In this document: positions 1-42,303 of the stretch, one piece after another
Position numbering within the stretch: position 1 is the stretch's first letter
How the letters are laid out: each line of letters opens with the position of its first letter
NCBI GenBank assembly: GCA_020891255.1
Contig: BQFW01000007.1
Location: forward strand, 1,116,001-1,180,000
DNA: 64,000 nucleotides
Source: Entomortierella parvispora E1425
Taxonomy: Eukaryota; Fungi; Mortierellomycota
Reading direction: 5' to 3'
Notes under the pieces: generated by a model
What the model was told of the DNA's origin: nothing
Seen by the model: the letters and a program-made list of their open reading frames with translations, nothing else
The model's database searches: none
Translations under genes and position numbers: made by a program

Positions 1-2042
1 ATGTCCAAGATCGAAGGACCGTATGCCTTTGTCTACTATCATGTAAGTCAAAGCTAGGCACGATGTCAAAAGAGAGAAGTACAGAGGCAAAAGCCCATTC
101 CATAACATGCATAATGGGACAGACTCTAACAACATCTGTGTTCTCGACCTTCATTCTTCTAAACACAGGCGACAAGCCAGCGTTTGTTTTTTGGAAGAGA
201 TTGTCTGGGAAGGCGATCATTACTTTGGCACAAGGAGAAGCAAGGCGAACATGGACTGGAGCTTCCCTTTCTCTTGACATCTGTCGGATACTCGTCATTC
301 CGGAGTGACTTGATGCCATTGGATGAGGTGCCTGCGGATGGAATTTATTGCATGTCCCTGAAGACTGGCACCAACGAGAAGACTCTATCTCACTTCCCTT
401 GGATCCCTTCAAGTGCCGTCGTCGATCGTCTCTCGTACAACATCTCCCTTGGCATGGTACAATTGATATTCTTGCTCAATAGTCTAATGTTGCTCAACAT
501 CGTTTTTGGAAACTGATCTTTCTTATTTTTATGGTATCCATAGCCCTTGCCATTCGGAAAGGTGAACGACACTCTTCCAACACCAGATCAGCTCCCTGAA
601 CCCTTTCCTGAAGATCTAAAGTTCAATTCCGCTCACCCCGAAGTGGTCCCGAAAATGACCAAGGACATGGAACAAGCTGTGGCAGATATGATTGAGGTCC
701 TAGGCGATTCTGTTCGCAGAAGAGTTCAGGATATCCCAAGGACAGGGTAATAGATCTCATCTCGGAACGAGAAACAATTGAAATTGGAGAAAACGAGTTA
801 TGTGGCATTTCACTAACCAGAAGATTTTCTTTTTATATTTTCGTTTCCTTTTTTTTTTTATAAATTGGACCAGCTTGATTCACGACGCTAGGGTAGGCAT
901 CTTGTTCTCTGGCGGATTGGATTGCCTCTGTTTGGCTGCTTTGGCTGATAGATTTTTACCTGAGGGCGAAGCAATCGACTTGCTGAACGTTGGATTCGAG
1001 AATCCAAGATCTGAAAAGGCAAAGGCTGCCGAAGAGGCCTTGGCCCTGAAGCGACTCAAGAAACAACAACAAATTTCACAAAAGAAGGGATCAAACTCTT
1101 CCAATTCAAGTCAAGGCAGTAACACTACCTCAGTGGAGACCCCAGTAACGGTCTCTAGCTCGAAATTCAATGTTCCTGATAGAATGACGGGATATGAGAG
1201 TTTGGCAGAGCTGCGAAGGATAGCCCCCAATAGACACTGGAACTTTGTCGAGGTCAACATCCCATTCGAGGAGGCGACGGCGCAGAGGTATGAAATCTTG
1301 GAACGGATAGCCCCATTAGAAACTGTCATGGATCTGGTAGGCTATGAACTCGTCATGTTGGACCAGGAGTTCCATGAAGAAAAAAGTGTCTGATATTAAC
1401 CAGAAACTTTTTCTTGAATTGGTAGAGTATTGCGATGGCTTTTTGGTTTGCGTCAAGAGGAATCGGTCATATCAAGGATGCAGAGGGAAAGATTTCGCCA
1501 TACACTAGTCAGGCAAAGGTCCTGCTCTCGGGCCTTGGCGCAGATGAGCAACTTGGAGGATATTCCCGCCACAAAGACCACTTTGAAGCAGCCAGTTGGA
1601 AGGGACTTATTCACGAGCTTCAATTGGATCTCGACCGGATATCCACACGCAACCTCGGTACATTGATAGCTTGTTTAATTGTTCTTTTTGAAGATTCTCG
1701 CAGTGTATGATTATCTAACATTAACGGCAAAAAAACACATATATAGGTCGCGACGATCGTATCATTTCAGATCATGGTAAGGAAGCGCGATACCCATTCC
1801 TGAGCACCAACGTGGTCCGGTTTCTCAGCAACCTTCCAGTTCATCTCAAGGTCGATCTCCGGTACCCTCGTGGTGTGGGCGAGAAGATTTTGCTCCGCAA
1901 TGTGGCTAGAGCGCTAGGATTTGAGCGGGCCAGCACCCACTGGAAGCGAGCAGTCCAGTTTGGAGCTAGGACAGCAAAGATGACAGAGAGCGGCCGATCT
2001 GAGATTGGGCAGCAAGTCGTCGACCGCAGAGCAGCCGAGTGA
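1..2042 (+). CDS. ASNSD1: Asparagine synthetase domain-containing protein (ASNSD1/YML096W-like); 5' end lies upstream of the window; multi-exon
   Basis: Spliced frames give [11 protein letters not shown]|[20 protein letters not shown] (intron 43-168), [46 protein letters not shown]|[18 protein letters not shown] and [13 protein letters not shown]. These are characteristic ASNSD1 motifs. GT-AG introns also at 457-543 and 747-873, with two more near 1337-1426 and 1658-1746. Confidence 0.9.
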
Positions 2043-2371
2043 GAGTGAGAGTAAGGATGAGAGCGAGAGAAAAGACGACGGTACAACCAAAAAAAAAAAA
2101 AAAAAAAAAAAAAAAGCACTCATGGTAATAAAAAGGCGCCAACCTTCAGAAAATACCTACACCTACAAACAAAAAAGGCGATTTTCCTACAGTGCTCTTT
2201 TCGTTCCCTTGACACCTTCAGACTCAGCTCGGTGATCTCCTTCCGTTCTGCACTCCATTCCTTTGTCCTTTTCCATTTCTTTATTTCTTTTTCTTTTCTT
2301 TCATTCTTTTCCTTTCTCCCGGCTCATTACATTCCTCCCTCCCCTCTCCTCTCCTTAATTCATTCATTCCA

Positions 2372-4084
2372 ATGTCACTTGCACAGCGGATCGCCCTCGT
2401 CACTTCCAGCGCTGGTCGCTCGTCGGGATCAGTCCGGCGAATGCATCAACATTCCCATGCACTCTCCATGCCCACCTCTTCTTCCTCTTCCCGGACAAAC
2501 TCCACTCTACTCCTCAGGAACCCAGCAGGACGTCTTACCAGACCAGCTTCCTCTGCTCTCCTGCGTCTGCCCAACTTGTCCTTGTCCTCTTGCGCTAGAA
2601 CTTCTCTCCTCTACAGCAACAACCATGCCCGAAACATGTCAACGGGCCCTGGTGCCAAAGAACAGGAAGAACCCATCCAAGGGTCCGCACCAACTTACAA
2701 ACGCCACCTCTTGATCTGCAAAGGACTCCCCGAGAAGGACTGGCCCAAGAAACCAGAAATGTCAGATCCGTACCTGAATTTGCTCTCGACCGCTGTGCGC
2801 GGACAGGAAGTCAAGGTCAACATTACAGACATTGCTTCCCACAATGAGAACACGTCGTCAAGCACCGCTCTTGGAGAGGCCTTGCCATCTGCAGGCCCAC
2901 GCTTTGATCTGGTCTTGTTCCCCGACAACGTCAGGTTTTTGAACATTCGTCCCGAGGCCTTCCGGGACTTGTCCCGGTTCATGGAAAAGAACCCCATCGA
3001 CGAGTTGCGATCCTTGATCGAGACCAAGAAGGCTCAAGAGGAGGATAGCTTCATCACAGAGTTGGTCCCTGGAAGTGGCGAAAAGGTGGCAATCGAGTTG
3101 GTCAAGGAGCCCAGCGCAGTGTTGGTCTGCATTCACGGATCCAGGGATTGCCGCTGCGGAGAGCAAGGTGGAGAGTTGTACAGGATCTTGAAGGATATGG
3201 TTCAAATGACAGGATTGACAAACTCGGTCAAGGTCTATGGTGTCTCGCACATTGGAGGACACAAGTACGCACCCAACACCATCATGTATCCTTCAGGCGA
3301 CTGGCATGGCCACTTGTCAGATCGGGATTCGAACGATGCTCAACAGATCTTGTTTGATGCTTTGGCCAACGGAGGCGTGGCCGGACGCGTACGAGAACGT
3401 GCTGCCGATCCCATCATGTTGGACAAGTGGCGCGGCCGGATGGGGATGAACAAGGAGGATCAACTGAAGCTGTATGAGGCTGCTTTGAAGAAGAAGTCTT
3501 CCCAGGGATCCGTTGGCTCTGCTGCATCCCTGTTTTCTGCACCGGGCGAGGAACTGTACGAGGACGATGGACTGAAGGAACGTAAGAATGCTTTGTCAGT
3601 CGAGTCTGATAAACCCACCACACTAACAGAAGCATCAACGTCCGCAAGCCCGCAAAAGGTCAAGATTGTGTTTGAGACTTTCCAAAAGGTCAGAACTGAG
3701 ATTGAGGCCAAGGTTGGAGAGAGGATCTTGGACATTGTCAAGGACAAGGATCCTAGCCGACATGGCGTATACCAAGCACTCGAGTGCACCTGCGGCGGAC
3801 AGCTTGGTAAGTTGGTCAAAATGACTTATTTTATGATACGCCCTACACCTGGCTGTTCTTTCGCTAACTCTCATCTCTTTATACTTTTTATCTCTTTAGA
3901 GTGCGCCACATGCCATGTCTATATTGAGCCTCCATACAACGCAAGACTCCCCGATGTTACAGACGCAGAGGAAGACATGCTCGAGTATGCGGTCGGTCGT
4001 AAAGTCGAGACATCACGCTTGGGTTGCCAGATCAAGATCCAGCCAGAGATGGAGGGCATGGTCGTCAAACTTCCTCAGTACTAG
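2372..4084 (+). CDS. Predicted mitochondrial fusion protein: sucrase/ferredoxin-like (Apd1/Aim32-type thioredoxin-like ferredoxin) domain plus C-terminal adrenodoxin-type [2Fe-2S] ferredoxin
   Basis: About 90 N-terminal residues are Arg/Ser-rich with no acidic residue, ending ARNMST (presequence-like). VCIHGSRDCRCG (C-x8-C) and SHIGGHKYA (H-x3-H). After splicing intron 3807-3899: CGGQLECATCHV (C-x5-C-x2-C), EEDMLEYA and SRLGCQI. Confidence 0.85.
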   Translation: MSLAQRIALVTSSAGRSSGSVRRMHQHSHALSMPTSSSSSRTNSTLLLRNPAGRLTRPASSALLRLPNLSLSSCARTSLLYSNNHARNMSTGPGAKEQEEPIQGSAPTYKRHLLICKGLPEKDWPKKPEMSDPYLNLLSTAVRGQEVKVNITDIASHNENTSSSTALGEALPSAGPRFDLVLFPDNVRFLNIRPEAFRDLSRFMEKNPIDELRSLIETKKAQEEDSFITELVPGSGEKVAIELVKEPSAVLVCIHGSRDCRCGEQGGELYRILKDMVQMTGLTNSVKVYGVSHIGGHKYAPNTIMYPSGDWHGHLSDRDSNDAQQILFDALANGGVAGRVRERAADPIMLDKWRGRMGMNKEDQLKLYEAALKKKSSQGSVGSAASLFSAPGEELYEDDGLKERKNALSVESDKPTTLTEASTSASPQKVKIVFETFQKVRTEIEAKVGERILDIVKDKDPSRHGVYQALECTCGGQLGKLVKMTYFMIRPTPGCSFANSHLFILFISLECATCHVYIEPPYNARLPDVTDAEEDMLEYAVGRKVETSRLGCQIKIQPEMEGMVVKLPQY

Positions 4085-4931
4085 ATCGAACCTCCTCCCT
4101 TTTTCTTGCCAACCATAGCCATGAACACCCACAAAATAGATAATTGCATCCTCCTCCCTTCCAAACCTCAGCGCTGACGACAAAAGTCCATTCCAAAACC
4201 ATAGATATCCGTATCATAAAAGGAAAGGAGGAAAAAAAAAAAGGTCGTTATGATCAAAAATTGAGAAGGGTAACCGTTTGTTCGCATTAGTGGTAAAGAG
4301 GATCATCCGCCAGAAAAACAAGAAGAATGACGCTCAATGTTTTGCCAGAGAACACACAAAAAAAAAAAAAGCAGTAAAGGGGGGACGCGTCTTGTCCGTT
4401 GCTGCCTTGTTGTTGCACAAGCCAGGTCAAACAGGAAAGGCACAACATCCTTCGCCACCCTTCCTACCAAAATCCTATCCAGAAACACCAGGAGGGAAAT
4501 AAACGAAAAAATGATGAAAGAGGAAAGAGGGGGTAGGAACCGTAAAGATGACAAACACAGGGAAGGGATCAACTCTTCTTTTTAAAATCGCGGAGGCTTT
4601 GTGCATGGGTCGGGCTTGCCTTCTTGAGGGGACGGGATAGTAATGGAAAAAAATGGCCTTTCTGTAAAAGTCGCGGAAGGACCATGACCATTCACAAGCT
4701 CAATGTGGTTGTTGTTGGTGGCCTTCTAACGGCCCTTATAAGTAGTCAGCCACCCCCCGAATAACATCAAGAACCATCCGACCAACATACATTGCAGTCT
4801 CTTTGCATTCTCGAGTGCACCACCCATTCTATTTTATTCCTTTTCCTTCTTCCCTCTCTTCAACCTTTGTAACGGATCTTCGCTCCAGCACTACCCTGTA
4901 GAGGCTCAATCCGACTCGACCTACTTACACC

Positions 4932-7619: not shown

Positions 7620-9178
7620 CTACGTACGGGGCTCAAACTCGTACGAAAACGAGGACGGGCGGTGCCTTCGTTGCGAGAAAATCTTGAAATCCTCTTCAAT
7701 CTCATCATCGCTCCCATTCATTCCACAGTCGTCTCCTATGGCGCCACGGGCGGTGGTCTTGGCCGAGGCCGTCTTTGCAGGGCCAACACTATAAGGGTAC
7801 TTTCTCTTGTTGTTGGGTCGATGATGCCGAGCCGAGTGCTCGTCCACACTGTCCTCATCCACAGTCATCATCGTCATCCTGTCATCAAATAAAGAAGAGA
7901 CCGTGGACATGGACGCGATGGAAGACGAAGTCGACAAGATCTGGGATGAAGACGGCAAGGATGCTAACGACATGGTGGGTGACGAAGGATCGCTGCTGCT
8001 GTCGCTTCCGTGACCTTCCTGCAACGATTCAAAAGGAAGGGCTGGCGTAACACCAGTCATTTCGTTGAGATCATCTCCTGAAGATCGAGCATGGATACTC
8101 AGAGGCAGCCTCTTATCCTCCACAAACACCACCTCACGCTCTGCCAATGGCTTTCGGGCCCCATCCTCGCCTCGACCATCCCCCTTGAGGACAGCGAGAA
8201 CATTTGTCGGATGCTCCTCTGCACGTGCGACTGTCTCTCCGGCTGCCGATCGACAATTTTGAAACTCGTCCATGACCGGGTACATGAGCACGTTCATCCG
8301 AGCAGTGACAACCACCACCGTGTTGGTCGGGATCTTTAACCAATCCGCCTTCTCAAACGTGAGGGGTTCCGAGGCAATGAGGACAATGTCCTCCCTCTTG
8401 TCGGCCTTCACCATCTTGTAATGACCCGGCTGAAACGATCCGAACCTTGTGCCAGAAGAGTAATAAAGACTGGCCGCTTCCAACGTTTTGGAGGAGATAT
8501 ATCTTGAACAGACAACTGAACATCCGTCCGTGACTGCAAAGTTTAACATGGAAGCCTCGCAGATTCCGGCGTCCTTGGACCACTGATTCAGTTTTTCGAT
8601 GGTCTTGAACATGGCGTCCTTCAGTTTAACATGGCAGAATGGTTCTGCCTGCAATGGGTTCGCATCCAGTTGACTCAAAAAGACTGCAAAGGCCCATTCC
8701 GAATCAGTGTTGCCATTGACGTTAAGGAAAATTGGATCTGGTAAGGACTCTTGAATCTTGCGTTTGATCTAGTGGGAGGGTAAACGAAATGAACACCAAG
8801 AGAATGAGCGTCCGAGACCATAAATGCGTATGGACACTGTCAGCACTTATTTCCTAATCCTAGGGGTTCAAAGCACAAGGGGAGAATGGAGGATGGACAA
8901 TAATAAAACCACACGCGAGGACATAAGCATGCACCCCCCAAAAAATTTTAGAAGACGCGTTTTTGTAGTGTAATCACGTATCCTTTAGAATGCCGTCAAA
9001 GTCGTCCATTCAATCCCCATCCTTTGAGGGATCGACACGGTCTACTGTTATCATTGGACACCACAACAGCCGATCAAGCGACCATAGTACGAAACAATAA
9101 CAACAACATATAACGACATTGGTGCAGGTATGGTGTCAAGCGACAAGACTCTGGCGTCATTTCTTTCCCTTCTTTCAC

Positions 9179-10910: not shown

Positions 10911-13900
10911 TCACCGCCCACCAAACATTTGCTTCTTGCCACGCCTGGCCCTTGGAGGAGAAGGCGGAGGCGCTCCGATCCGCTCCACCATCTCCTCCTC
11001 AAATACCGCCGCTTTGGCCCGCAATCGCTTGCGTTTCTTGACCACTGGCGGATCTACTTGGATCTCTGCTGGCGTCTGTTCTCCTCCTCCACCTTGTTCT
11101 GCTCCTCCCCCTTGTTCTGCTGTCCCAGCACCTGAGGTCAATGACGAATCATTCTTGGCTGACTCAAGGTCCTCTAGGGGCTCATGGCCAAGATCTCGAT
11201 CTTCATTCGGAGCTTGTTCCGTTTCTGGGCTTTGTTCGTTTGTTCCGTATTCAGAGTAATCATGGTCCGACTCCCAGTGCAGTTTTGGCGGGGGTGATAA
11301 TGTCTCCAATCTAGGATAAAGATTCCGAACAGGTGAGAGCTCGGCCAGCGGTGTACCAACATGATCGTCGATGCTGTACTGAGAGGCCTCTTCTTTGACT
11401 GGCGTGTTAACCGCGATGGACTGTTGGTGGTCAGAGTCTACAGCGATAGGCGCCGCCCGTCTCCTCTTGACGGGCCTCTCCTCGTAATCCTCATCAGACT
11501 CTGCAACGCGGACGGAGCGTCTTGAGATTCGAGACCTGCGAATGGGCTGAGATCCCTCACTCTCACTCGAGTACTGACTTTGAGTCTGAAACCCTCCAGT
11601 GGACCTCCGTCTAGGTACTGCCGAAGGGAGCTCAATGACAGGCATTGGAAGGGAACGCCGTTGGAGGTCTCTTCTGGATCTGACTGCTCGACTTTTGGTA
11701 GCCAGCACTTTTGACCCCTCTTTGCCATCATCGTTATTGTCGCTACTGTCGCTGATAATAATGACTCTGTCCATACTCTTGAATGCCAAATGTGCTTGGT
11801 CGTGCACCTTTGGAGTAACATCTTTGTCACCGTGGTCAACTTCGCCATCATGAACAGGCAGTTTGCATTGGTCAGCCTCTTCTGGGGTCTGGTCGTGGTC
11901 AGCTTGATCACACTTCGAGTCGCCTTCCTCAAGATTCTCGTCTTTCTCCCTGCTGTCCTCCGAAGCAGCCATGGCAGCAGAATCTTCCGCTTGGTCCATA
12001 GAAACCACGGGATGCGAATCGTTCAAATCTGAAGGACAGTCGGAGGCGCTGGAATCCAGTCCTTCGTGGTTCATCAGATCATGTTCATTCTGATTGCCCT
12101 CGATAGAATCGGTTCCCAGAGAGTTCAACGGTTCATCCACAGAGTTCGATTGAAATTCAATGACGGCCGCTGAGGGTGGTGTAGCTCGTTCTTGATCTTC
12201 CGATGCAAGAGTGATCTTGTCATCCTCCATCTCGCTCCCGCAGTCATGATAAACTTCTCCGGGGACATTGGTGCTCAGAGCCACTGTGGCATCAACATCA
12301 TCAGTGTCAACGCAGGAGCCGGTCTCGTTGTGTTGCTCGCCCGGGTCGGATATCATAGACAGGGCATCAACTGTTTCCAACGAGAAATTCTCGTTCTCCG
12401 CTGTTATGGGCGAGTCCCTTGAGGTATCAGGAAGACGATTTTCATCCATTGTTGTCATAGCCGGGTCATTCGAGGTAACAGACATATTGCACTGTGATAA
12501 ACTGCCAGGGGCCGAGGACATCGTGTGAGATCCAGGAACTGGTGCACGATTGAACCATGTTTTCCAAGCCTTGTTCTCAACAGTGGCGCATTCCAAAGCC
12601 TCCTCTACTTCCTTCATACGCCGAGGTCCTGGTCGTGCACGATTCGCGAGAGTACAAAGCTCTGTCTCTAGCTGTTGAATGCGCTGTTCACTGGCAAGCA
12701 ACTTTTCTTCAAGCTCAACCACCCGATTCCTGGATTGAGTTTCCGACTGGATGGTCTCTTTGACAGTATCCTTCAGCGAGCCCAAGAGTGTGTCCTTCAT
12801 GTGCTGAATTTCTGCATGATATGCCTCTCGCTCCGTATAGAACCTTTCATTCTCGGATTGTGCCATTGCCAAAAGATCAGATTGTCGACACAACTGTTCC
12901 TGAAGTCGATCCTTCTCAGCCTGGGCGTCAGTCACCTGTTCTTGGATTACGACTAGGCGATCTTCTGCCTCGGCAAGACGCTTCATCTCTTCCTTGTTTT
13001 GGCCAAGCTTGATCTCAAGCATGTCCTTGTCTGATCGCAACATAGCCAACTGCTTCAGTTCTTCTTTCCTCTTAAGCTCCATATTTTCGAGATTTTGCTT
13101 CAACTCCTTGTTCTGCGCAGCCTGCAGCGAAGCCAACTCTGAAAGCTCTCGGATAGCCATCTCTGTAAGCTCCCGGACAGCTCGTTGTTGCGCCTCTGTG
13201 CTGTTTTGCTTGGATTGTGCAGCCTCTTCCAAGTCAAGAGTGCGCTTCTCCAACAAAGCATCGAGTCTCGGTATAATTTCATCTGCAAACTCTGCTCGAA
13301 TTGACTCTTCCATGTTGTTTGCACGAGTCTCCGACGCCACCAACTTTTCATAAAGGTCGCTGATCTGGCCGTGCAACTGTTGAACAAGGTCATCTTGGTC
13401 TGGCTGTGATTCCTGTCTGCCATTGCTCAATGTTGATTCTGCAGGTCCCTTAGAGTTGGTTGCCTCCGAGGGACTGGTGATGACGGCCCCTCTCACCATG
13501 GGTGGGAGAGATCGTGGGGTTGATACATCCATTGCGACTGAAGCGAATCGGAGGGCCTGAAGTGTTTCGTCAAAGTCCGTCTCAGATGGATTCACATTGA
13601 CAATCAATGCGACTTGTGAATTTGAGCGTCCTTCGAGAGAGCTTTGAAAGAGCTGAGTAAGCTTGCTCTGACGATAGGGAACGAGCTCAGGTTGCTAAAA
13701 TGAAAGGGAGAGAGAGAGTGTATCATCAATACCAGGAAATAAAAAGTTTTTACCTTCAAGAGAAGGATTGTATCATGATGACTATACCTTTGATTTCCTA
13801 GATTGATTTCCGCGAAGGATCTCCATACATTGGCCCAAGACCATTAAGCTTGTGTTGATGTTTCCAGCCTCCCGGAGTCTTTGTCCCGAGCTTTTTGTAT

Positions 13901-22700: not shown

Positions 22701-25700
22701 TCTGCAAACTTCCATGTCTCGTCATCATCTATATTTAAATACCATTGACAGAACGAGAGATGAGAAAAAAGGTCCAGTGTTAAAGAAGGGAACAAGTCAT
22801 TCAAAAGTAATCGACATCTTACCTCGTCTGTGCCCATGATAGAATGTATCATTCATAGGCTTCAACAGCTCCAAGAGCTTAGAGAAATGTTGGGAAGATC
22901 GCTCAGCAGCCTTGGCATCATCCCAACCATTGAAAGCCCTCTCAGAATTCAAGAGCTCAGTGTAAAACTGTCGTGCTGCATGTCGGAGCTCGCTCTCGTT
23001 TTGTTGGATCATAATCTGCATGAGCCATACATTGCTGTTGGCCAGGATTGAAGCCTGGGCGAGACGACCACAATGACCATAGTCGGAGATATTTCGGAAG
23101 AACTCCAGGCACTCAAAGGCTACGCTGTACATGGACGTTGAATCCAGAACCTAATGAAATGTAATTCAGAGTATGAATAAAAGACAGCAATTGACCATTG
23201 GACATAAAAAAACCTCGTCATGGACCATGAGGCCTACCTTGAGCAAGCCCGTAATGATGTAGTCCACTCTCTGTTCCAAGGCATCATCCTCAATCTGGAT
23301 AACGTCTTTAAGTACTTGCAAGATTGTTCCAAACTGGTCATCGTTCGCGTATCCCAAGAATGTCACAAGCGTATCCAGTAGACGGCTGCCAAGACCACTG
23401 TGGGCAGAAAAATGGATCACAATCTTGGAAATAATCGAGCTGTCCATCCGATCTTGCAGCATCTTCACAACCAAGAGCAGTGGTCGGTCATTCATTGGAC
23501 CACTGTTCATGGAGCACAAGAGCGAACTTAGATCCGTTTGAGAAAGACAAATGGTTTGATCCAATTCTGGAGATTCACTGACAATATCTTCCGCTGGAGC
23601 ATCGTCCGAGTTGGAGCTTGGAGACGACGCCCCGGAAGAGGTAGAGGTTGGCGACGTAAGCCTATTTGCATTCGAATTTGGTCCAGGGGCGCGGCCATTC
23701 AACTTCTTTTGAGTACCCTCAATGGACTTCAAGATATCGCTGGCCAAGACCAACTCCTGGACGGTCAACATTAGGTTCCGGAATGCTGGCTTTGTGAACT
23801 TGTCGCCCATCTTCTTTTGCCGTGTTTCTCCTTTCTCGTCGCTGAAATAAAACTCGATAAGGTCGGTCACATACCCATCCTGGATCATGGCCCTACACTG
23901 TGCTCGTCCCATCTGCGTAATGTTGTACATCAGTCTAAAGTATTCATCAAAGTTCCTCCAGTTTGAACGGGCATTGGGCAACAAATCCAAGAGCCTCTGA
24001 ACGACTATTTGGACCACCACGCTCGCGGCATGGTCTGGGGTCTTGACAATATCCATGGGCGAAGTGAGTCGAGGATCTGGCGACATGATCATAGTCGGTG
24101 AGGTGTGGACATAGCCGTAGAGCTCACTCTCCTGACCCAAAAGGCTGGAAAGGGCCTCAGAAATCAAGGAGATGACAGCTTCGCGGACTTGGTTGATTGG
24201 ACACTCCAACAGTATACTGCATAGCTGAGCCTGGTTCTCTGTCACTTGGTTCAAGAACTTGGCGCATCCAGCTGGATAACGAGCAAGTAATGGCACAAGC
24301 AACTTTGTCCATTCAAGCAGCTCCTGATCCACATCCCGTGCATGGATCAAGACCGTAAAGAAAAAGTCCAGGCCGTATTCCATAGAAAGGTAGTCCAGTC
24401 GACTCTCTTCGGCACCGCTTGCATCATCGTTCATCAAAGGTGTTGGAATAGACTTGTGCATGTTGAAGAGCTCCCATACAAAGTTGTAGTACAGGCGATC
24501 AAAAATAGCGAGGTCCTTGAGCAGCGTTATGTTTTCCTTGGCGACAACATCCCTGATATCCTTGGGCACTTCTCCGGATGAAACAATGGACTGCGCCTGT
24601 ACAGGACGCTCGGCGCGTTCATAGAAAAGCATGTAGGCGCTGTATGGTTTCGTCGTAGATCGGGGAGGGCTTTTCATATAGGGCGATTCGCTTTGGACAA
24701 ACTCAGGCCCTCCAAATGCTTTAGCCGGGATCTCGCTCGCATCAAACTCTTCCACTTTGGAATCGTTAAAGTGATACCATGAAGTGCTCTCGCCGTCAAA
24801 ATGAGTTGTCCTGTCATGGCTTCGATCTTTGATGTAGGAGTAGTAGTGACCAGAGTCTGCCGTGCCAGTGTGCACCAAAACACCGACGAGGTTGTATTGG
24901 AACACAGGTGTATCTTTACCAGGCATTGTGGTGGTGGATGGCGAGGTGCTCCCGCCCTCCTGTACTTGTTCCTTTTTGGTGAGGTAGTCCAATGTGTAAG
25001 GCTCCATATTCAAGCGGGTCGGGAATTCAAACCGGTCGTTGATCTTGATGCGCCTCATGGTATCCATGTCGTAGTCGAAGCGCTTAAGATGAAGGATCAA
25101 GTTCTGCGGCAGCTCTTTGATACAGGCACTATAAATGGAAGCGCATGGTACATTTAGTTTAAGGCAAAACATTGCACCAACACCTTCGCATTTCACAATA
25201 CAACCTAGAAAGGCTGGATTACCGTTTGATGGCGTCCACATGCTTGTCACAGGTGGAGCACTTGTACTTGTTGTCTACGAAAAGCAAATGGCGAAGCCAT
25301 GTCAGAGTCAGCAAGTACGCTACCAGAATAGTATTGCTTTCTTGAAAGATAGACCCACTTACCTCCATCCAAGATTTCCCCCTGGACATAAAGCTGCAAG
25401 CTCTCCTCTAAGGACTTCTTGTTCTTGACTTCACATTGGATAGAAAAGAAGCTGTCCTCGCGCTCAGAAATGTGTTCACAATCCTTGGACTTGATCTGCT
25501 GAACTAGTTTGCCTCCATATTGCTTCTTGAAGAGTTCTTCCTGGGGTGTGCCCTTCACAGTGCTCTCCAATCGATCAAAGAGAATGTTGAAGAACTCGTC
25601 CACATCCATCTGCACCGCCACGTTCATGGGGTTGCCGTCCCAGTCCTTGTAGGAATAGCAGAAGCTATGAGCGTTATATGATCGCCTCATACTCGTTTGC

Positions 25701-28700: not shown

Positions 28701-31700
28701 TCATGCACTTACGGTTGACAGCAATCGCCTGTTCCAATTAATGACTACGAAATACTGTCGAGCACATTGCCATGCCTTTGGTGTAAGCGACGGAATATCC
28801 AAGTCGGGGAGCAATTTCTCGTAGATGTACTCTGCAAAATGTTGCTCTGTAATTGCTTCCAAGCACAAGAATGCCTCATCCTGCTCTTTGGGTCCAATGG
28901 GGTCCACAATAAGGCATTTCCAAAGAGTATCAGCCAATCCAGGAGCGTTCCAATGGTTCGGAAAGGTGACGCACATGCATTTCAGGAAATCGAGTCGAAC
29001 TTTGAGCTGCATACTCCTCTGGTGCTCATGGGCGATCGAATGAGAAGAATGCAGAGCGAAAGCTAAAGAACAACATAGATGTTGATGTAAGAAGTCTGCA
29101 CGCGTACATCCAATCGTTCAATACTCAAGTGAAAGAATTACCAGCGTTGGTCGGGCTAGGCGATGGTGGAGTTCTCTTCACCGATGCCACGTACGCACTC
29201 AAGTTTGCGATAAAAAGCTCGGGAAGAGTAGCACATGTCCTCTCGTACAGCTGCAAGGTCGCTTTGTCGTTGACCGATGGAACTGTGAATACAGTGGCAC
29301 TTCCTGTTAGAGTGAATCAGTTGGTGTGATGAAAATAAAAGGGAACATTCAGAAGACTTACTAAAAATTCCCTGGACAACCTGCAGACTCCAGATGGCGC
29401 CGGGATGGTTGTCACGCAAGTCCTGCAAACACTGCTCAATCAAAGTCGCACGATCTTGTTGCAAAGGTCCCACCTGCAATCCATCCGAGAGCAGGTGGGC
29501 AATACCCATACTGACCTCCCGGTTGAGCGTTGGGGCGGGTCCAAATGAAGTGTCGTCCTTTGCATCAACAGCAAGAGTGGATTTTCTCAAGACATTCAAC
29601 AAAGTCTCGTAGGGTATCAAGGAAACTGTTCCTTCGTGCTATTGTGAGTTGGGCAAAAGAATACTGGGTAAGACGAGCTGCCTGATGTGTCATTTTTGTA
29701 TATCTTGAAGCATTGTTTTTTTTTTTTTTTTAGGCTTACCGGGTTATACTTCGAGCGCTGGACCATAGCTTGGAACAACGATCGAGCCAGATCCACTAGC
29801 TGCAGGTCCCAGCTTTCGAGCGGGACGGCTTGGAGCTTCTTGAAAAGATGCTGCAAGATCTCCTGAGGCAGTTTGCTACAAACGTCGCTCAAAACCTGAT
29901 AGACCCCATACACAATCGATCGATGTTGGTTGCCCTAAATAAAGTCGATGTATTCGAGCGAGTTAACCTACTGAAAGTACATACCAACAGGCCTAAATAT
30001 CATGGCACAAGGTCCAAACTTACTCCGACGGCTGCCCAAACCAAGTCGATGTCCTCGATTCTCAGAACCTTGGCTTGATTCAAAAACACAAGAACATCCG
30101 TGCTTCTCTGCACAATTTCCAGGTGGATGTTTGGTCCAAAGATGTATCCAACTATTTGCAGGCTCTGAAGTTTGTTGCAGAGATGTCTATTGTGCAACAA
30201 CAAGACCACGGCATCAGTTCCTGCTTTGCACCATACGTGGCTTACATGATCGCCATTCTCACTTACTCTATGGGCTTTCTGTCCTGCTCCATTTGAACTT
30301 CCATGTCAATATCCGATCTGCGACGCTGTCGAGATCGACCTTGCTGTAGATTCTGGATGCGCACAAGAACCTCTTTCAGCTCGATCAGCCCAGCAAGCCT
30401 CAAGTCCAAACGTGTAGTCTTCATCAACTTAACAGCCATCTCCAGTCGAAAGTCTGCAAATTTGACCTCGCCGAGATTGTACCGCGAGACGGGGTCGTGC
30501 GTATCAAACTCTTCAAATTGCATTCCTGGCTCGTGAATGACGCCGCTGTGCATGGCTTGCATGGGATAGTTCTCCAAAAGAAAGGAGCCGACCTGTCCGA
30601 TGATGTCCAAAACTGTTGCCTTACTCACAGATTTGAAACTATCCGCTTGATCTGGAAAGTAGGCAAGGACAGCTGCGATGAGTCTCTTTGAGAAGTCTGC
30701 GATCTTTGAAGTGTCTCCAATGATTCGAATCTACGAGAGTACAGTAGACAATAAACCTAAGTGAACTGTGCTTCGCGACCATGACATAAATAAACAGTAG
30801 CCACGCCTTCAAGAGAGTTTACCCGAGAGATTGGAGCCAACAGGAGTGACAGGTTCTGTGCCTTCATGTCCAGACGATCTGGGGTCTCCAGAGAAGCTTC
30901 GATGGCCTTCATATAAATCTCCATTCCTCCAAGCGATATGAACAGCTTCTGAAAATCCTGGTGAGAGTGTGAGATTTCCTCCGCCTGGTAGGAGAGAGCT
31001 GTCAGTATACTGGGCGATTCAACATGGCCACCATTACATCATTTGCGCAATGTTTGACCCTACCTCGAATCCATACTCTGGGGAATAGTCGTCAAACCGA
31101 GCCATCTGTGTCAGAAAATATAGAAATCAGAATCATCGAGCATCTTTTGATCAAACAAATCACATCTTTAGCAAAAGCCAAGACTGATGAAATTATACCC
31201 GTTCAGCATGAAGCAACCTCGACGGTCGCTTTGGATTTCGCTTGTATATCTCCAAATCTCCATACTCAAACATAGTCGCCAGTGCCTGGGAATACTGCTC
31301 GGGAAGGGTGCCTTCCATTTGTACAATGAGGCAGGAAAGACGAACAAATGCCTGAAGATATTCTACGATGGACGTAGTATGCGGATTTAACCTAAGACGA
31401 AAAGAACGGATCAATATATTTAATCAAACTCCGTAGCACTCGTTTTGTAAGAACAACTTTGAGTTCCTGATAGATTACCTTCGATCGGTCAGGATTTTTG
31501 TCCAGTTTCCAAGGTACGAATACTCCAAGCTCTGTTGTTTTTCTGCAGCAAATGGGACATCGGGGGGGGCGTCACCCCGCGTCCTCCATTTGACAGAAAG
31601 TTCAATGAGGTCTTTAATGTCCGAGTAAGCCGAAGAATCCTCTGAAGACCGATTAAGTAGAGTAGGAATGTGGACATCGTTAGTATCAGAGAAGGGTTGA

Positions 31701-32551
31701 GTGAACTTGTTCCTTTCGTTATTACCTTGAAGAAGTCTCGCTGTCAACTCGTCGCATGATTGTGTGAATGCATTTTGGGTAGAAAATCCGACATTGGCTT
31801 GTCCTGGATGATAGGCAGATGACTCGGCTCCAGTGTCCAGACGTATTCCGGTACCCGCGCCAGAGGCTGTTCTCATTCTCGGGGTTCGATTACGCAAGGG
31901 TCCTGGTCGACGTTTCCGCAGTTGTTCCACCTGCTGTCGAGATTTGAGATAGGGTCCGTGCTGAAGAGCCCTGTGGTATTCGGTTGTGCCCTGGGCGTTC
32001 AGGTCCTGCATCTCTTCCATGCCAGTATAATCAGAGAGGTCGTCATCTTCGTCTTCATAGACCCCAGCGTCGTCGTCGTCGTCTCCGAGCTCCTCGTCCA
32101 TTTCGTCCTCGTCCTCGTCCTCGTATTCGTCTGAGGACTGTCGAACAATGTCGCTTCCAGGACCCGAAGATTCTCCCCACCTCTCGACTGCGGCAGGAGA
32201 GCTCTCTCCCCATGTCTCTCCCACAGCAGGCTGAAGCAGCTCAGTATCCGAGTCGCTGTCGTACTCGGACGTGGCAGCCCCAACATACTCTACGTCCGAT
32301 TGTTTTGTCCCGAGAGATGCGTGCTCGATGGCCAGGACGGGGTCGCCTTCCTGGTAGGGTTGGTATGCTGGAGGGTCTTGCGACTGCAATGTAGGGAGTT
32401 TAGGACCGCTCTCGAGCGTGTTTGGTGGCTGCGCTCCAGTGATCTTTCGAGTCGGCTCTTGAAGCGAAGGGCCAAGAGTGTTGCCCTGATCCTTTTCTGC
32501 AGGTCCTTGGTCCATAGGTTTGGCTATGCCCTTTTCTGCCGCAGAAGTCAT
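19732..32551 (-). CDS. USP34: Giant ubiquitin-specific protease, USP34-like (USP9/24/34 clade), about 30 introns, roughly 3,300 aa by estimate
   Basis: Cys box GYVGLQNLGATCY, QMDVDEFF, LHLKRFDYD, His box LVHTGTADSGHYYSYIKDR, WYHFNDSKV and AYMLFYER. NLGATCY and HTGTAD are USP34-type as I recall them. I traced a continuous reading frame through GT-AG introns from 32551 to 19732. Confidence 0.88.
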
Positions 32552-39726: not shown

Positions 39727-40419
39727 GGGGGAGTTCTTCGTATGTGTGTGTTTGTTGTTGTTTAAAGGTGGCGGAGAGGAGGGAAAGACGATCGTTTCGA
39801 CCATGTCAGCCCCCGTTTACCTTGACCGTTTGCCTTTTTTGCCCTCTTTTCATCTTTAGTCATTTTTTTTTCATGTTCCATCCTCCCCTTCTCCTCCGCT
39901 CGTTCATTTTGTCCTTTTTCTCCTTTCTTCATACTAGAGTACTTGTTTTCTATAGATACCTTCTCTCTCCAAAATGATCAAACTTGCGAAATACAGCCCT
40001 GATATGATAGACCAACGTGCAAAGTGGGGAGTGAGAGGGGTAAGGGTAAGGGTAGGGGTGAGCAGCAAGATAACAGGCACGCGAGAATGAAATGTTGTTG
40101 TTACGCCAACAGTCGTAAAATTAGAGTCGGAAACCAAGTATTTTTAGGTGGAAAGAAAGAGACCCTTTGGAGTTTGGACGTTTCCCTGTCTCTTGACTTT
40201 CTTTTTTTTTTCTGCATGTAACACGCTCATTGTCGCTGCATCCCTTTGAATCCCCATCTTTCCTCTTTTCCTTCCCTCCTTTCTTCTTTCCCACTCTCTC
40301 TCATCTCTCATACACCGACCCTCCTTCTCCACATCTTTCCGACCCTGTGCCAGAGCGGACATACCTACTCGCTCTTTTTCCGCTCTATTGCTCTTTTTTA
40401 TTCCACCCACTTTCCCAAA

Positions 40420-42303
40420 ATGGAACGCGATCCGTTCCTTCTCGGCCAGGAACAACGTTTTCAAGAACAACAACAGCAACAACAACAGCACCCACACTAC
40501 CAAGAACAGCCCTATGGACAACACACCCACCCACATCTCATGAAGGATGGCAGCCTCACGGACGAACAGGCCTTTGCTTTGATGCACCCACACCAACCAC
40601 ACTATCCTTCTTCTCCGCCTCTTCCTCACCATCATCACCAATTATTGCCTGGAGCTACAGGAGGCGAATCAGGAGGCGGTGTTGTCCTCGTCGGCGGCGG
40701 TGGCGGTCCTAACAGCAATGGTACAAGGTCGGAATCAGGAGGTTATCGCCTTCCCGACATCAGAGCCGGGGCCCCTCTCTCCTCCGCCTCTACGGCCTCC
40801 ATGATGAGTCCTCCTCGATCCGGTCTCACGCTGGGGTACCCTTCTCCCATCCCAGCAGGGGCGACAATGGGCAGTCGGAGTGAGAAGGGAGCTGGATCTG
40901 TGGTGAATTATCCGTTGGACCAAGGGGCTTACTATGCCCCTTATTCTCCTCCGCAACAACACCAACAACAACTTCAGGCCCAGGCACTCTCAATACAGTC
41001 TTCCGGCTATTCGCCCTATCTGCACTCACAGCAACATCCAAGCCCCTATGACGAGACGCCCTTTGGGTCACACTATTCGCTTGTCAGCGGGAGCAGCAGC
41101 AGTGTTGCAGGAGGCTATCCAAGACACCAACAGCAACAATATGCAATGCAGCCATTGAAGGAGAAGGGAAGCACGGGTGGCCACAGCAGCAGTGGACATG
41201 GACACTATACCCAGGCGCCTTTGGTGGACTTGAGTGGCTCCCCCACGCCCATCCTTCGATCTGCTTCCCTCAAGATGGAAAAAGCCTCTGGAAAAAATCA
41301 AGAGGGCAAAGAGGATGACGAGACATCCGAGGCCATGGCGCACAGGGACAGTTCGGATGCTTTGTCAAAGGGTCAAAGGAACCAGGACATTGATCAAAGC
41401 AGCGATGATGACGATGAAGAAGAAGGACAAGAACGCGGTGCTTCCAGGAGAAGGGACAGCAAACGGTGCTGGTGTTGTTCGAAACGTCTTTGTGTCTACT
41501 TGACGTTCTTGATGGTGATCCTGTTGGCAATTGCGCTGTATTTCCTAGTGCCAAGAGCGCCTGGCTTCAGCTTCGTGACCGTGACCTCGATGGGAGACCC
41601 CGTCGTGTCCAAGAATCAATTCCAGGAACCATTCTCCATCCAAATTAGCGTCGACAACACTGAAAACTACCTTCCTCTTCGACTGAATTCCATAGGCATG
41701 AGTGTAAGTTATCTGTTGACTCTTCTACCATGTCATGTCCCTTGTCATTCGTCGTTTCCTGTGGACTAACAAAACTCGACTTCTTTTGTTCTTTCTCGCT
41801 CTCTCTAGGTCTGGATGAAGATTGACATGACAAAGGTCGGCAACAATGACGATCTCCCTTCAGCGTTCACCCTCAAAGCCAAACAAATCCAAACCATCTC
41901 AGTCCCCATGGTGTTCGACTATACCTCGCTCAAGATCGACACCAACAGCGACGGTACCTTTCAACAACTGATCACGTCCTGTACACCTGTCGCAGCGGGC
42001 GGCACTCCTGTAGGACTCAACTTGGTTTTTGGTGGACAACTCTATGTCTGGGGCTTGTCCTGGGTTTGGAAACCTCAGTTTAGCTTCAACACCCTGAATA
42101 TCCCCTGCCCTATCAATGCTAAAGACCCAGCCACACTTCCGCTGCCTTCTTCTCCTGCCTCTCCTTCTCAGGCACTACCATCGACGGCTTCGGTCACAAG
42201 GCCTGCTGCTAGCGGTGCTTCCTCGGCGGCAGTCGCAACGGCATCAGCGCAAGGTTCTCGTGCAACCGCCTCTGCAACTCCTACACAAGCTGCCCATTCA
42301 TAG
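40420..42303 (+). CDS. Type II single-pass membrane protein with Gln/Pro/Gly-rich cytosolic N-terminus and probable LEA_2-like luminal beta domain
   Basis: ATG at 40420, intron 41704-41808. One TM helix (LCVYLTFLMVILLAIALYFLVPR) is preceded by the Cys cluster RCWCCSKRLC. It is followed by ISVDNTENYLPL and a beta-rich segment, then a Ser/Ala/Thr tail. The LEA_2 call is by motif impression only. Confidence 0.6.

What the first reader, a model, noticed from the sequence alone, without database searches (positions are those of the whole stretch)
2372..4084. Two-cluster ferredoxin fusion: Apd1/Aim32-type bis-histidyl [2Fe-2S] domain joined to an adrenodoxin/Yah1-type domain behind a mitochondrial presequence
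Seen: one ORF carries a presequence-like N-terminus, C-x8-C plus H-x3-H (VCIHGSRDCRC...HIGGH), an acidic/Ser linker, then C-x5-C-x2-C...RLGCQI with the reductase-binding acidic helix EEDMLEYA. Established: yeast Apd1 and Aim32 hold a 2Cys-2His [2Fe-2S] cluster and are stand-alone proteins with unclear partners. Yah1/adrenodoxin is a separate 4-Cys low-potential carrier reduced by Arh1. Inference: the fusion could be an intramolecular electron wire (Arh1 to adrenodoxin domain to bis-His cluster) and a Rosetta-stone clue to Aim32's redox partner. I know of no description of this architecture but cannot confirm novelty without a search.
Basis: partly seen in the sequence, partly recalled or inferred. 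Interest (0 to 1): 0.8.

Follow-up and report, generated by a model that had tools for sequence, protein, structure and literature searches.

The report
Aim32-type iron-sulfur protein fused to ferredoxin
This fungal gene really does join an Aim32/Apd1-type iron-sulfur domain to a mitochondrial-type ferredoxin in one protein, but the same fusion is found across many fungal lineages and sits unstudied in public databases, so it is a testable clue to Aim32's partner rather than a one-off.

Summary
Window 2372-4084 (+) is one gene of a Mortierellaceae-like fungus. The 570-codon ORF hides an in-frame 93-nt intron (3807-3899). Only after splicing (539 aa) does the ferredoxin motif read C-x5-C-x2-C.

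The protein has four parts:
- a 96-residue N-terminus free of acidic residues, presequence-like;
- a Suc_Fer-like domain (Pfam 6e-28) with C253-x8-C262...H293-IGG-H297;
- an acidic linker;
- an adrenodoxin-type domain. Exon 2 alone matches yeast Yah1 at 3e-14.

The architecture is not unique. I found 59 proteins carrying both complete cluster motifs, from about 11 Mortierellaceae genera, at least nine chytrid genera, Calcarisporiella, Dispira and all three Basidiomycota subphyla. All are labelled hypothetical or auto-named. My paper searches found no description.

Linkers are short or acidic and unlike presequences, which favours an intact two-cluster protein over a cleaved precursor. Related fusions add a FAM210 membrane domain (chytrids) or lipoyl synthase (one genome).

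Not resolved: electron flow from the ferredoxin domain to the His-ligated cluster is inference. I could get no RNA evidence, no inter-cluster distance and no answer on a separate YAH1.

The parts
2372..4084 (+). Whole gene: two exons (2372-3806, 3900-4084 including the stop) and one intron; spliced product 539 aa
   Evidence: The start Met and the 'MS.A.RI' N-terminus are conserved in orthologues.
2372..2659 (+). Presequence-like N-terminus (aa 1-96): no Asp/Glu; 11 Lys/Arg and 29 Ser/Thr in the first 95; poorly conserved in sequence but not in composition
   Evidence: Mitochondrial targeting is inferred from composition only.
2678..3328 (+). Suc_Fer-like (Apd1/Aim32-type) domain, aa 103-319
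   Evidence: Pfam PF06999, 6.1e-28, 98.6 bits against a cut-off of 34.9. In an orthologue model the second half has the thioredoxin-like ferredoxin fold (1f37 Z 13.8, 5abr Z 13.5).
3128..3157 (+). C253-x8-C262, the two Cys ligands of the His-ligated [2Fe-2S] site
   Evidence: invariant in alignments A1, A2 and A4
3248..3262 (+). H293-I-G-G-H297, the two His ligands
   Evidence: invariant in A1, A2 and A4
3392..3655 (+). Interdomain linker (about aa 341-428), net acidic, with no R-x-(F/Y/L)-(S/A) processing-type motif
   Evidence: About 73-92 residues in Mortierellaceae, against about 22-36 in most other fungi listed.
3527..3580 (+). Conserved linker motif SLFSAPGEELYEDDGLKE (aa 386-403), specific to Mortierellaceae
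   Evidence: consensus lines of A1 and A2. A relative's contig diverges right after it, at 3581.
3656..3806 (+). First part of the adrenodoxin-type ferredoxin domain (aa 429-478), with first Cys ligand C474 (3791-3793)
3807..3899 (+). Phase-1 intron, 93 nt, in frame and stop-free (GTAAGT...GCTAAC...TAG)
3900..4081 (+). Second part of the ferredoxin domain: C480 (3902-3904), C483 (3911-3913), acidic helix EEDMLEYA (3968-3991), C521 (4025-4027), C-terminus ...KLPQY
   Evidence: phmmer against solved structures: Yah1 2mjd 3.2e-14, Etp1fd 2wlb 1.1e-10, FDX2 2y5c 3.1e-10

Best explanation
This is a nuclear gene for a mitochondrial two-cluster iron-sulfur redox protein. An Aim32/Apd1-type module is fused at its C-terminus to an adrenodoxin/Yah1-type 4-Cys [2Fe-2S] ferredoxin domain. 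The Aim32/Apd1-type module consists of a cluster-less first ferredoxin-like half plus a thioredoxin-like half. The second half holds a 2Cys/2His [2Fe-2S] site.

Shown here: the gene structure, both domain identities, conservation of all eight cluster ligands, and the wide spread of the fusion in fungi.

Inferred: the protein is imported by its long basic, hydroxylated N-terminus and stays in one piece. The ferredoxin domain is reduced by the Arh1-type NAD(P)H-ferredoxin reductase through its conserved acidic helix. It then passes single electrons downhill to the higher-potential His-ligated cluster, which reduces an acceptor that is still unknown. On this reading, Aim32 in budding yeast is the split form and would take electrons from free Yah1.
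For: One gene: uninterrupted frame. The intron is conserved in position and phase. Orthologues of 54-67% identity occur in about 11 Mortierellaceae genera.

Domains: PF06999 at 6e-28. Exon 2 against Yah1, Etp1fd and FDX2 at 1e-10 to 3e-14. An orthologue matches the same ferredoxins. Fold matches reach Z 20 for adrenodoxin-type and Z 13.5-13.8 for thioredoxin-like ferredoxins.

Ligands: C-x8-C...H-x-G-G-H and C-x5-C-x2-C...C are invariant over 42 diverse fusion proteins. The E-E-D-M-L acidic helix is also conserved.

Ancient, selected fusion: 59 proteins carry both full motifs, from chytrids to Basidiomycota. On a tree of the Aim32-type domain the fused state needs 10 changes, against 49 in shuffles.

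Intact rather than cleaved: linkers are short (about 22-36 aa in most lineages listed), net acidic, and lack an R-3 processing motif.

Precedent for a ferredoxin fused to its client: Etp1, ferredoxin/Cox15 (PMC11408685).

Thermodynamics (from memory, not tested): Apd1 Em about -164 mV (Stegmaier et al. 2019, abstract) against roughly -270 to -350 mV for adrenodoxin-type ferredoxins.
Against: - No transcript or protein evidence. The run search returned no RNA run holding the stretch, and the four runs laid showed no spliced form; the one long matching contig kept an unrelated intron.
- Targeting rests on composition alone.
- No coordinates were available, so no inter-cluster distance. The good model (pLDDT 90.7, pTM 0.71) superposes on Atlas models of the same family only over the Aim32-type part, so the domain orientation is not settled.
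- Pfam Fer2 falls below its cut-off in Mortierellaceae orthologues (15-20.4 bits against 21).
- The acceptor is unknown.
- Cleavage cannot be excluded, because Etp1 is reported to be processed (from memory).
Confidence: 0.55

Rival explanations
1. Precursor polyprotein. The fusion is imported as one chain and then cut into a free Aim32-type protein and a free ferredoxin, as reported for S. pombe Etp1. The fusion would then serve co-expression and co-import, not an intramolecular wire.
For: Etp1 is a ferredoxin/Cox15 fusion (PMC11408685). Its ferredoxin part was crystallised as residues 516-618. Its processing is from my memory of Bureik 2002 and Schiffler 2004. A related Suc_Fer-like/lipoyl synthase fusion has a presequence-like linker ending in RGY|AT, so cleavable fusions may exist in this family. 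Mortierellaceae have an unusually long linker.
Against: The linkers of the ferredoxin fusions are net acidic, lack R-x-(F/Y/L)-(S/A) motifs, and are only about 22-36 residues in most lineages listed. The Mortierellaceae linker carries a conserved acidic motif rather than a presequence-like stretch. Chytrid versions add a third, membrane domain after the ferredoxin, which fits a tethered assembly better.
Confidence: 0.17
2. The ferredoxin domain is the organism's only housekeeping mitochondrial ferredoxin (the Yah1 orthologue) and has merely become attached to one of its many clients. The fusion would then say little about a dedicated Aim32 pathway.
For: In S. pombe the general ferredoxin is carried this way (PMC11408685). 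I could not show a separate YAH1 in any Mortierellaceae genome (searches were uninformative).
Against: The fused domain is divergent: 36-38% identity to Etp1fd and FDX2, and Pfam Fer2 below cut-off in Mortierellaceae. It carries a lineage-specific insert before the cluster loop. It ends one residue after ...LPQ, whereas the solved Yah1 chain runs 11 residues further. A protein serving Fe-S assembly, heme a and CoQ synthesis would be expected to stay closer to Yah1/FDX2 (inference).
Confidence: 0.15
3. The two clusters do not form a wire. The His-ligated cluster would be a labile, sensing or transferable cluster, and the ferredoxin domain would serve its assembly or repair rather than through-transfer to a substrate.
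For: His-ligated [2Fe-2S] sites are often labile or regulatory (general knowledge). Aim32 has been tied to redox quality control rather than to a defined reaction (PMC8482512). Mitochondrial ferredoxin supplies electrons for cluster synthesis (PMC11126956).
Against: Apd1's cluster was described as a stable proton-coupled electron-transfer centre (Stegmaier 2019, from memory).
Confidence: 0.1
4. Artefact: two neighbouring genes read through by chance, or a mis-assembly.
For: None beyond the general risk with raw ORFs.
Against: Zero stops in frame against 15-17 in the other frames. The same single-chain architecture appears in dozens of independently assembled genomes. There is no room for a promoter or UTR between the domains.
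Confidence: 0.02

Closest known systems
S. cerevisiae Aim32 (mitochondrial) and Apd1 (cytosolic), Pfam PF06999 Suc_Fer-like
   Same: Same Pfam family at 6e-28. Same C-x8-C-x30-H-x-G-G-H ligand motif. Same two-half layout, with the cluster in a thioredoxin-like second half (PMC11126956; fold in an orthologue). Presequence-like N-terminus, as in Aim32.
   Different: Carries an extra C-terminal adrenodoxin-type ferredoxin domain and a long acidic linker. It has no Apd1-type C-terminal targeting tripeptide and ends ...LPQY. I did not resolve whether the Aim32-type part is closer to Aim32 or to Apd1.
Yah1 / FDX2 / adrenodoxin (mitochondrial [2Fe-2S] ferredoxins)
   Same: Four Cys in C-x5-C-x2-C-x37-C spacing, an acidic interaction helix, and the adrenodoxin fold.
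   Different: Not free-standing. 36-38% identity to Etp1fd and FDX2. Insert 'DPSRHGVYQALE' before the cluster loop in Mortierellaceae. The chain ends right after ...LPQY, without the further C-terminal residues of Yah1. Pfam Fer2 is below cut-off in Mortierellaceae orthologues.
S. pombe Etp1 (Cox15-ferredoxin fusion)
   Same: A mitochondrial-type ferredoxin sits at the C-terminus of a protein that uses it (PMC11408685, best fold match). This is a direct precedent for reading the fusion as a partner clue.
   Different: The N-terminal partner is a soluble Fe-S protein, not the membrane enzyme Cox15. The linker is not presequence-like. Processing is unknown.
Uncharacterised fungal 'Suc_Fer-like + Fer2' proteins in public databases (e.g. 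Podila verticillata MVEG_09494, Powellomyces hirtus, Kwoniella, Tilletia, Rhizoctonia)
   Same: Same architecture and the same eight ligands. The window's gene is an orthologue of the Mortierellaceae set.
   Different: Mortierellaceae have a linker roughly 50 residues longer, with a conserved acidic motif. Spizellomycetales add a FAM210 domain.

Membership tests
Apd1/Aim32 family (Pfam PF06999, Suc_Fer-like) | Match to the family profile above the curated cut-off | tested here: met
   98.6 bits against 34.9, E 6.1e-28, residues 103-319
Apd1/Aim32 family (Pfam PF06999, Suc_Fer-like) | C-x8-C-x(n)-H-x-G-G-H ligand motif (CX8CXnHX3H in PMC8482512) | tested here: met
   C253, C262, H293, H297, with 30 residues between C262 and H293. 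Invariant in 42 fusion proteins.
Apd1/Aim32 family (Pfam PF06999, Suc_Fer-like) | Thioredoxin-like ferredoxin fold of the cluster-binding half | tested here: met
   Tested on an orthologue model (Calcarisporiella, pLDDT 90.7), not on the window's own protein: 1f37 Z 13.8, 5abr Z 13.5 over residues 119-215.
Apd1/Aim32 family (Pfam PF06999, Suc_Fer-like) | Bound [2Fe-2S] cluster with bis-His ligation (EPR, Mössbauer) | not testable with these tools
   Needs recombinant protein
Aim32 specifically (mitochondrial member) | Mitochondrial localisation | not testable with these tools
   Composition only: no acidic residue in the first 96 aa, 11 basic residues in the first 95. No targeting predictor was available.
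Adrenodoxin/Yah1-type [2Fe-2S] ferredoxin | Pfam Fer2 (PF00111) above the curated cut-off | tested here: inconclusive
   The window's two exon pieces give no hit on their own. Mortierellaceae orthologues score 15-20.4 bits against a cut-off of 21. Chytrid and Calcarisporiella orthologues score 30-38 bits.
Adrenodoxin/Yah1-type [2Fe-2S] ferredoxin | Significant similarity to solved adrenodoxin-type ferredoxins | tested here: met
   Window exon 2: Yah1 3.2e-14, Etp1fd 1.1e-10, FDX2 3.1e-10, adrenodoxin about 2e-9. Orthologue P0002: 3.5e-16 and below.
Adrenodoxin/Yah1-type [2Fe-2S] ferredoxin | Four Cys ligands, C-x5-C-x2-C...C | tested here: met
   C474, C480, C483, C521 after removal of the intron. 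Invariant in A3 and A4.
Adrenodoxin/Yah1-type [2Fe-2S] ferredoxin | Adrenodoxin fold | tested here: met
   Tested on orthologue models: 2wlb TM 0.88, 8rmd TM 0.92; 3hui Z 20.4, adrenodoxin 7m8i Z 18.5.
Housekeeping Yah1 orthologue | Being the genome's canonical mitochondrial ferredoxin, with no other copy | not tested
   Three attempts to find a free Yah1 in Mortierellaceae were swamped by bacterial ferredoxins or found too few candidates.
Etp1-type ferredoxin-client fusion | Ferredoxin domain at the C-terminus of a partner protein | tested here: met
Etp1-type ferredoxin-client fusion | Post-import cleavage between the two parts | not testable with these tools
   The linker lacks presequence-like composition and an R-3 motif, which argues against cleavage but does not test it.

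The most novel reading that the evidence does not exclude
The Aim32-type domain is an obligate client or partner of the mitochondrial ferredoxin, and this link is ancestral in fungi. Budding-yeast Aim32 would be the split form and would work with Yah1/Arh1. The other fusions seen here point to a membrane-associated, ferredoxin-driven pathway. They are a FAM210 inner-membrane domain after the ferredoxin in Spizellomycetales, and lipoyl synthase in place of the ferredoxin in one basidiomycete-like genome. That pathway might feed or service lipoyl synthase, a known ferredoxin client in humans (PMC10462841, PMC10470009).
Probability: 0.25. Interest if true: 0.7.

Novelty: new variant of a known kind. 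Interest (0 to 1): 0.5.

Why it matters
[quoted passage not shown] A conserved, pan-fungal fusion to a Yah1-type ferredoxin gives a concrete hypothesis that yeast genetics and in vitro assays can test: Arh1 to Yah1 to Aim32. It follows the same logic that links Yah1 to Cox15 through Etp1.

The fused protein would also be a compact natural system holding a 4-Cys and a 2Cys/2His [2Fe-2S] cluster in one chain, useful for studying intramolecular and proton-coupled electron transfer. The gene itself is ordinary for its lineage. The value lies in the uncharacterised subfamily.

Tried and rejected
- Transcript evidence. The single run search returned DNA or unknown runs only. Four runs with the same species label were laid on 2100-4400 (2,301 letters). 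They gave only one divergent relative's DNA contig and no spliced form.
- A free Yah1 in Mortierellaceae. The ferredoxin-domain query found only 19 candidates, all fusion fragments or bacterial. The Atlas search on that part returned phage ferredoxin clusters. A profile of 20 ferredoxin domains returned 7,998 hits, and the 120 listed were almost all 106-residue bacterial-type ferredoxins, the few named ones alphaproteobacterial. The question stays open.
- Inter-cluster distance. The tools give no coordinates. The second (Calcarisporiella, 42 sequences) was good, with pLDDT 90.7 and pTM 0.71. Atlas models of the same family superpose on it only over the Aim32-type part, so I make no claim on domain packing.
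- Literature. Stegmaier et al. 2019 (JACS) is not held. Searches for Aim32+Yah1, Suc_Fer-like/PF06999, sucrase plus ferredoxin-like, and Mortierella+adrenodoxin found no description of the fusion. This covers open-access papers only.
- Lipoyl synthase link. I checked whether lipoyl synthase lies next to the Aim32-type gene in two sister sequences of the lipoyl-synthase fusion. One contig ends at the gene, and the other is a short assembly with an unrelated LRR domain. Uninformative.
- Rejected: two separate genes, or a chance ORF.
Full report
**What is in the window.** An ORF of 570 codons runs from 2372 to 4084 on the + strand. Its frame has no internal stop, while the other two forward frames have 15 and 17.

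Reading the DNA shows a canonical fungal intron inside it, at 3807-3899. It has GTAAGT at the 5' end, a GCTAAC branch site and TAG at the 3' end. It is 93 nt long, a multiple of three, and free of stops, so it was read through as 31 spurious residues.

After splicing the protein is 539 aa and the ferredoxin motif reads C474-GGQLE-C480-AT-C483...C521. Three independent lines confirm the intron:
- All nine annotated orthologues aligned lack the 31 residues.
- The annotated Podila verticillata gene has one 109-nt intron, not a multiple of three, at the same position and phase.
- A contig from a related strain replaces 84 letters here with 101 unrelated ones, while keeping the flanks about 87% identical. 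In the linker, by contrast, its replacement (68 letters for 71) keeps the frame.

**Domains.** Pfam places a Suc_Fer-like domain (PF06999, the Apd1/Aim32 family) at residues 103-319, with E 6.1e-28. It carries C253-x8-C262 and H293-I-G-G-H297, the ligand motif described for Aim32 and Apd1 (PMC8482512; PMC11126956).

The C-terminal 110 residues are an adrenodoxin-type ferredoxin. The product of exon 2 alone matches yeast Yah1 (2mjd, 3.2e-14), S. pombe Etp1fd (1.1e-10), human FDX2 (3.1e-10) and adrenodoxin. The full-length Linnemannia orthologue matches the same set.

Pfam's Fer2 model is a weak detector here. The window's pieces give nothing. Mortierellaceae orthologues score 15-20.4 bits against a cut-off of 21. 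Chytrid and Calcarisporiella orthologues pass at 30-38 bits. This explains why the precomputed annotation lists only PF06999 for the Mortierellaceae proteins.

Structure prediction of orthologues agrees. In a high-confidence model (pLDDT 90.7, pTM 0.71), residues 239-346 match adrenodoxin-type ferredoxins at Z up to 20.4. Residues 119-215 match the thioredoxin-like ferredoxins of Aquifex (1f37, Z 13.8) and Azotobacter (5abr, Z 13.5).

**N-terminus and linker.** The first 96 residues contain no Asp or Glu, and the first 95 hold 11 Lys/Arg and 29 Ser/Thr. Orthologues share this composition but not the sequence. This is what a mitochondrial presequence looks like, but I could not run a targeting predictor, so localisation is inferred.

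Between the conserved W-R-G-R-x-G motif and the first ferredoxin strand lie 73 residues, with 11 basic and 12 acidic. They include a motif conserved across Mortierellaceae, SLFSAPGEELYEDDGLKE.

**How common the architecture is.** The organism is a member or close relative of the Mortierellaceae. The 35 best hits, at 54-67% identity, come from Linnemannia, Mortierella, Podila, Benniella, Gamsiella, Dissophora, Lobosporangium, Actinomortierella, Entomortierella, Haplosporangium and Lunasporangiospora. All are labelled hypothetical or auto-named.

A profile search of 1.84 billion cluster representatives, followed by my own domain and motif scan, found 88 proteins matching both domains. Of these, 59 carry both complete ligand motifs in the same order. 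Named examples:
- Chytrids: Powellomyces, Polychytrium, Quaeritorhiza, Chytriomyces, Entophlyctis, Cladochytrium, Phlyctochytrium, Gaertneriomyces, Fimicolochytrium.
- Mucoromycota: Calcarisporiella.
- Kickxellomycotina: Dispira.
- Basidiomycota of all three subphyla: Tremella, Kwoniella, Cryptotrichosporon, Phaffia, Rhizoctonia, Clavulina, Rhodotorula, Ceraceosorus, Tilletia.

The ESM Atlas holds two mainly basidiomycete clusters of 91 and 101 members with the same pair of domains.

On a tree of the Aim32-type domain the fused state is strongly clustered: 10 changes against 49 in shuffles, and at least 4 forced by well-supported branches. A large clade of 59 unfused sequences stands apart. 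Unfused relatives include Balamuthia ('Aim32'), Mycoemilia, Spiromyces, Volvariella and Galerina.

So the fusion is old, probably ancestral to much of the fungal kingdom, with later losses or splits. It is not a peculiarity of this genome.

**Is it described?** Searches of the open literature found nothing on this architecture. They covered Aim32+Apd1+ferredoxin, Aim32+Yah1, Suc_Fer-like/PF06999, Apd1+bishistidinyl, sucrase plus ferredoxin-like, and Mortierella+adrenodoxin. The key Apd1/Aim32 paper (Stegmaier et al., JACS 2019) is not held, so I cannot exclude a remark there. The Aim32 paper I could read mentions neither Yah1 nor Arh1.

**How it most likely works.** All eight ligands and the acidic helix E-E-D-M-L-x-Y-A are conserved across 42 diverse fusion proteins, so both sites are under selection.

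The closest precedent is S. pombe Etp1, where the mitochondrial ferredoxin is fused to the C-terminus of its client Cox15 (PMC11408685). By the same logic, the Aim32-type domain is a client or partner of the ferredoxin.

Published potentials would make transfer from the 4-Cys cluster to the His-ligated cluster downhill. They are about -164 mV for Apd1 and about -270 to -350 mV for adrenodoxin-type ferredoxins. I recall these from memory and did not test them here.

I therefore favour an intact protein in which Arh1-type reductase reduces the ferredoxin domain, which then reduces the His-ligated cluster. The final acceptor is unknown. Confidence in the architecture is above 0.9. Confidence in the mechanism is about 0.5.

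**Rivals.**
- *Cleavage into two proteins after import.* This is possible, since Etp1 is reported to be processed (from memory). But the linkers of the ferredoxin fusions are acidic, lack R-x-(F/Y/L)-(S/A) motifs, and are only about 22-36 residues in most lineages listed.
- *The fused domain is the only housekeeping ferredoxin.* I could not test this. Its divergence, its lineage-specific insert and its short C-terminus argue against it.
- *Chance read-through of two genes.* Excluded by conservation.

**Side observations that bear on function.**
- Spizellomycetales chytrids carry a third domain after the ferredoxin, FAM210A/B-like (PF06916, 4e-11). In animals this family is mitochondrial inner-membrane (general knowledge). 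It suggests a membrane-tethered version of the module.
- In one genome (GCA_022963135.1) an uninterrupted 791-codon gene joins the Aim32-type domain directly to lipoyl synthase (LIAS_N plus Radical_SAM). Its linker looks like an internal presequence ending in RGY|AT.
- Lipoyl synthase is a ferredoxin client in human cells (PMC10462841, PMC10470009).
- The lipoyl synthase link is a lead from one genome only. Two attempts to extend it failed.

**Limits.** I have no RNA evidence, no localisation test, no coordinates and so no cluster-to-cluster distance. Atlas models of the same family superpose on my model only over the Aim32-type part. I had no access to the rest of this genome to look for separate YAH1, ARH1, AIM32 or APD1 genes. 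The scan's own notes hold nothing on this apart from the same stretch.

**Verdict.** I rate it as a new, uncharacterised variant of a known kind, of moderate interest.

Noticed in passing
P0036, P0037, P0054 (Gaertneriomyces, Fimicolochytrium, Powellomyces); no window coordinates: Spizellomycetales chytrids have a triple fusion: Suc_Fer-like, then Fer2, then a FAM210A/B-like domain (PF06916, E 4e-11 to 3e-10), with about 230-265 residues after the last ferredoxin Cys. It suggests a membrane-anchored form of the two-cluster module.
   Followed up: partly
L001:6001-8376 (+), record JALCUU010000041.1 of GCA_022963135.1 (protein P0119): One uninterrupted 791-codon gene joins a Suc_Fer-like domain with an intact C-x8-C...H-x-G-G-H motif directly to lipoyl synthase (LIAS_N plus Radical_SAM), with no ferredoxin domain. 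Its linker is Ser/Thr/Arg-rich and ends in RGY|AT, like an internal mitochondrial presequence. Seen in a single genome.
   Followed up: partly
P0074 (Rhodotorula dairenensis, 764 aa): A DUF1996 domain (PF09362, 5e-85) precedes Suc_Fer-like plus Fer2 in this gene model. This could be a merged gene model or a further fusion.
   Followed up: no
window 3527-3580 and about 3740-3775: Two Mortierellaceae-specific features: a conserved acidic linker motif, SLFSAPGEELYEDDGLKE, and an insert before the ferredoxin cluster loop (about 7 extra residues, within DPSRHGVYQALE). Both are absent from the chytrid, basidiomycete and bacterial sequences aligned.
   Followed up: partly
window 800-2042 (+): The upstream neighbour is a split, intron-containing gene with asparagine synthase domain pieces (PF00733, 2e-5 and 7e-5). 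It ends about 330 nt before the start codon at 2372. An A-run at about 2093-2115 and a CT-rich leader lie between the two genes.
   Followed up: no
window 23166-25250 (-), 42798-44852 (-), 57022-58029 (-): Other genes recognised in the window: a ubiquitin C-terminal hydrolase (UCH plus DUF3517), alpha-adaptin (Adaptin_N plus the two C-terminal adaptin domains) and a VTT-domain membrane protein. Long ORFs at 7620-8678, 10911-13607, 31475-32551, 40246-41769 and 60119-61684 gave no Pfam match.
   Followed up: no
literature: PMC7140478 against PMC11408685: [quoted passage not shown] The Shy1 paper and the PDB title for 2wlb describe Etp1 as a ferredoxin/Cox15 fusion. The review's wording appears to be a slip.
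   Followed up: partly
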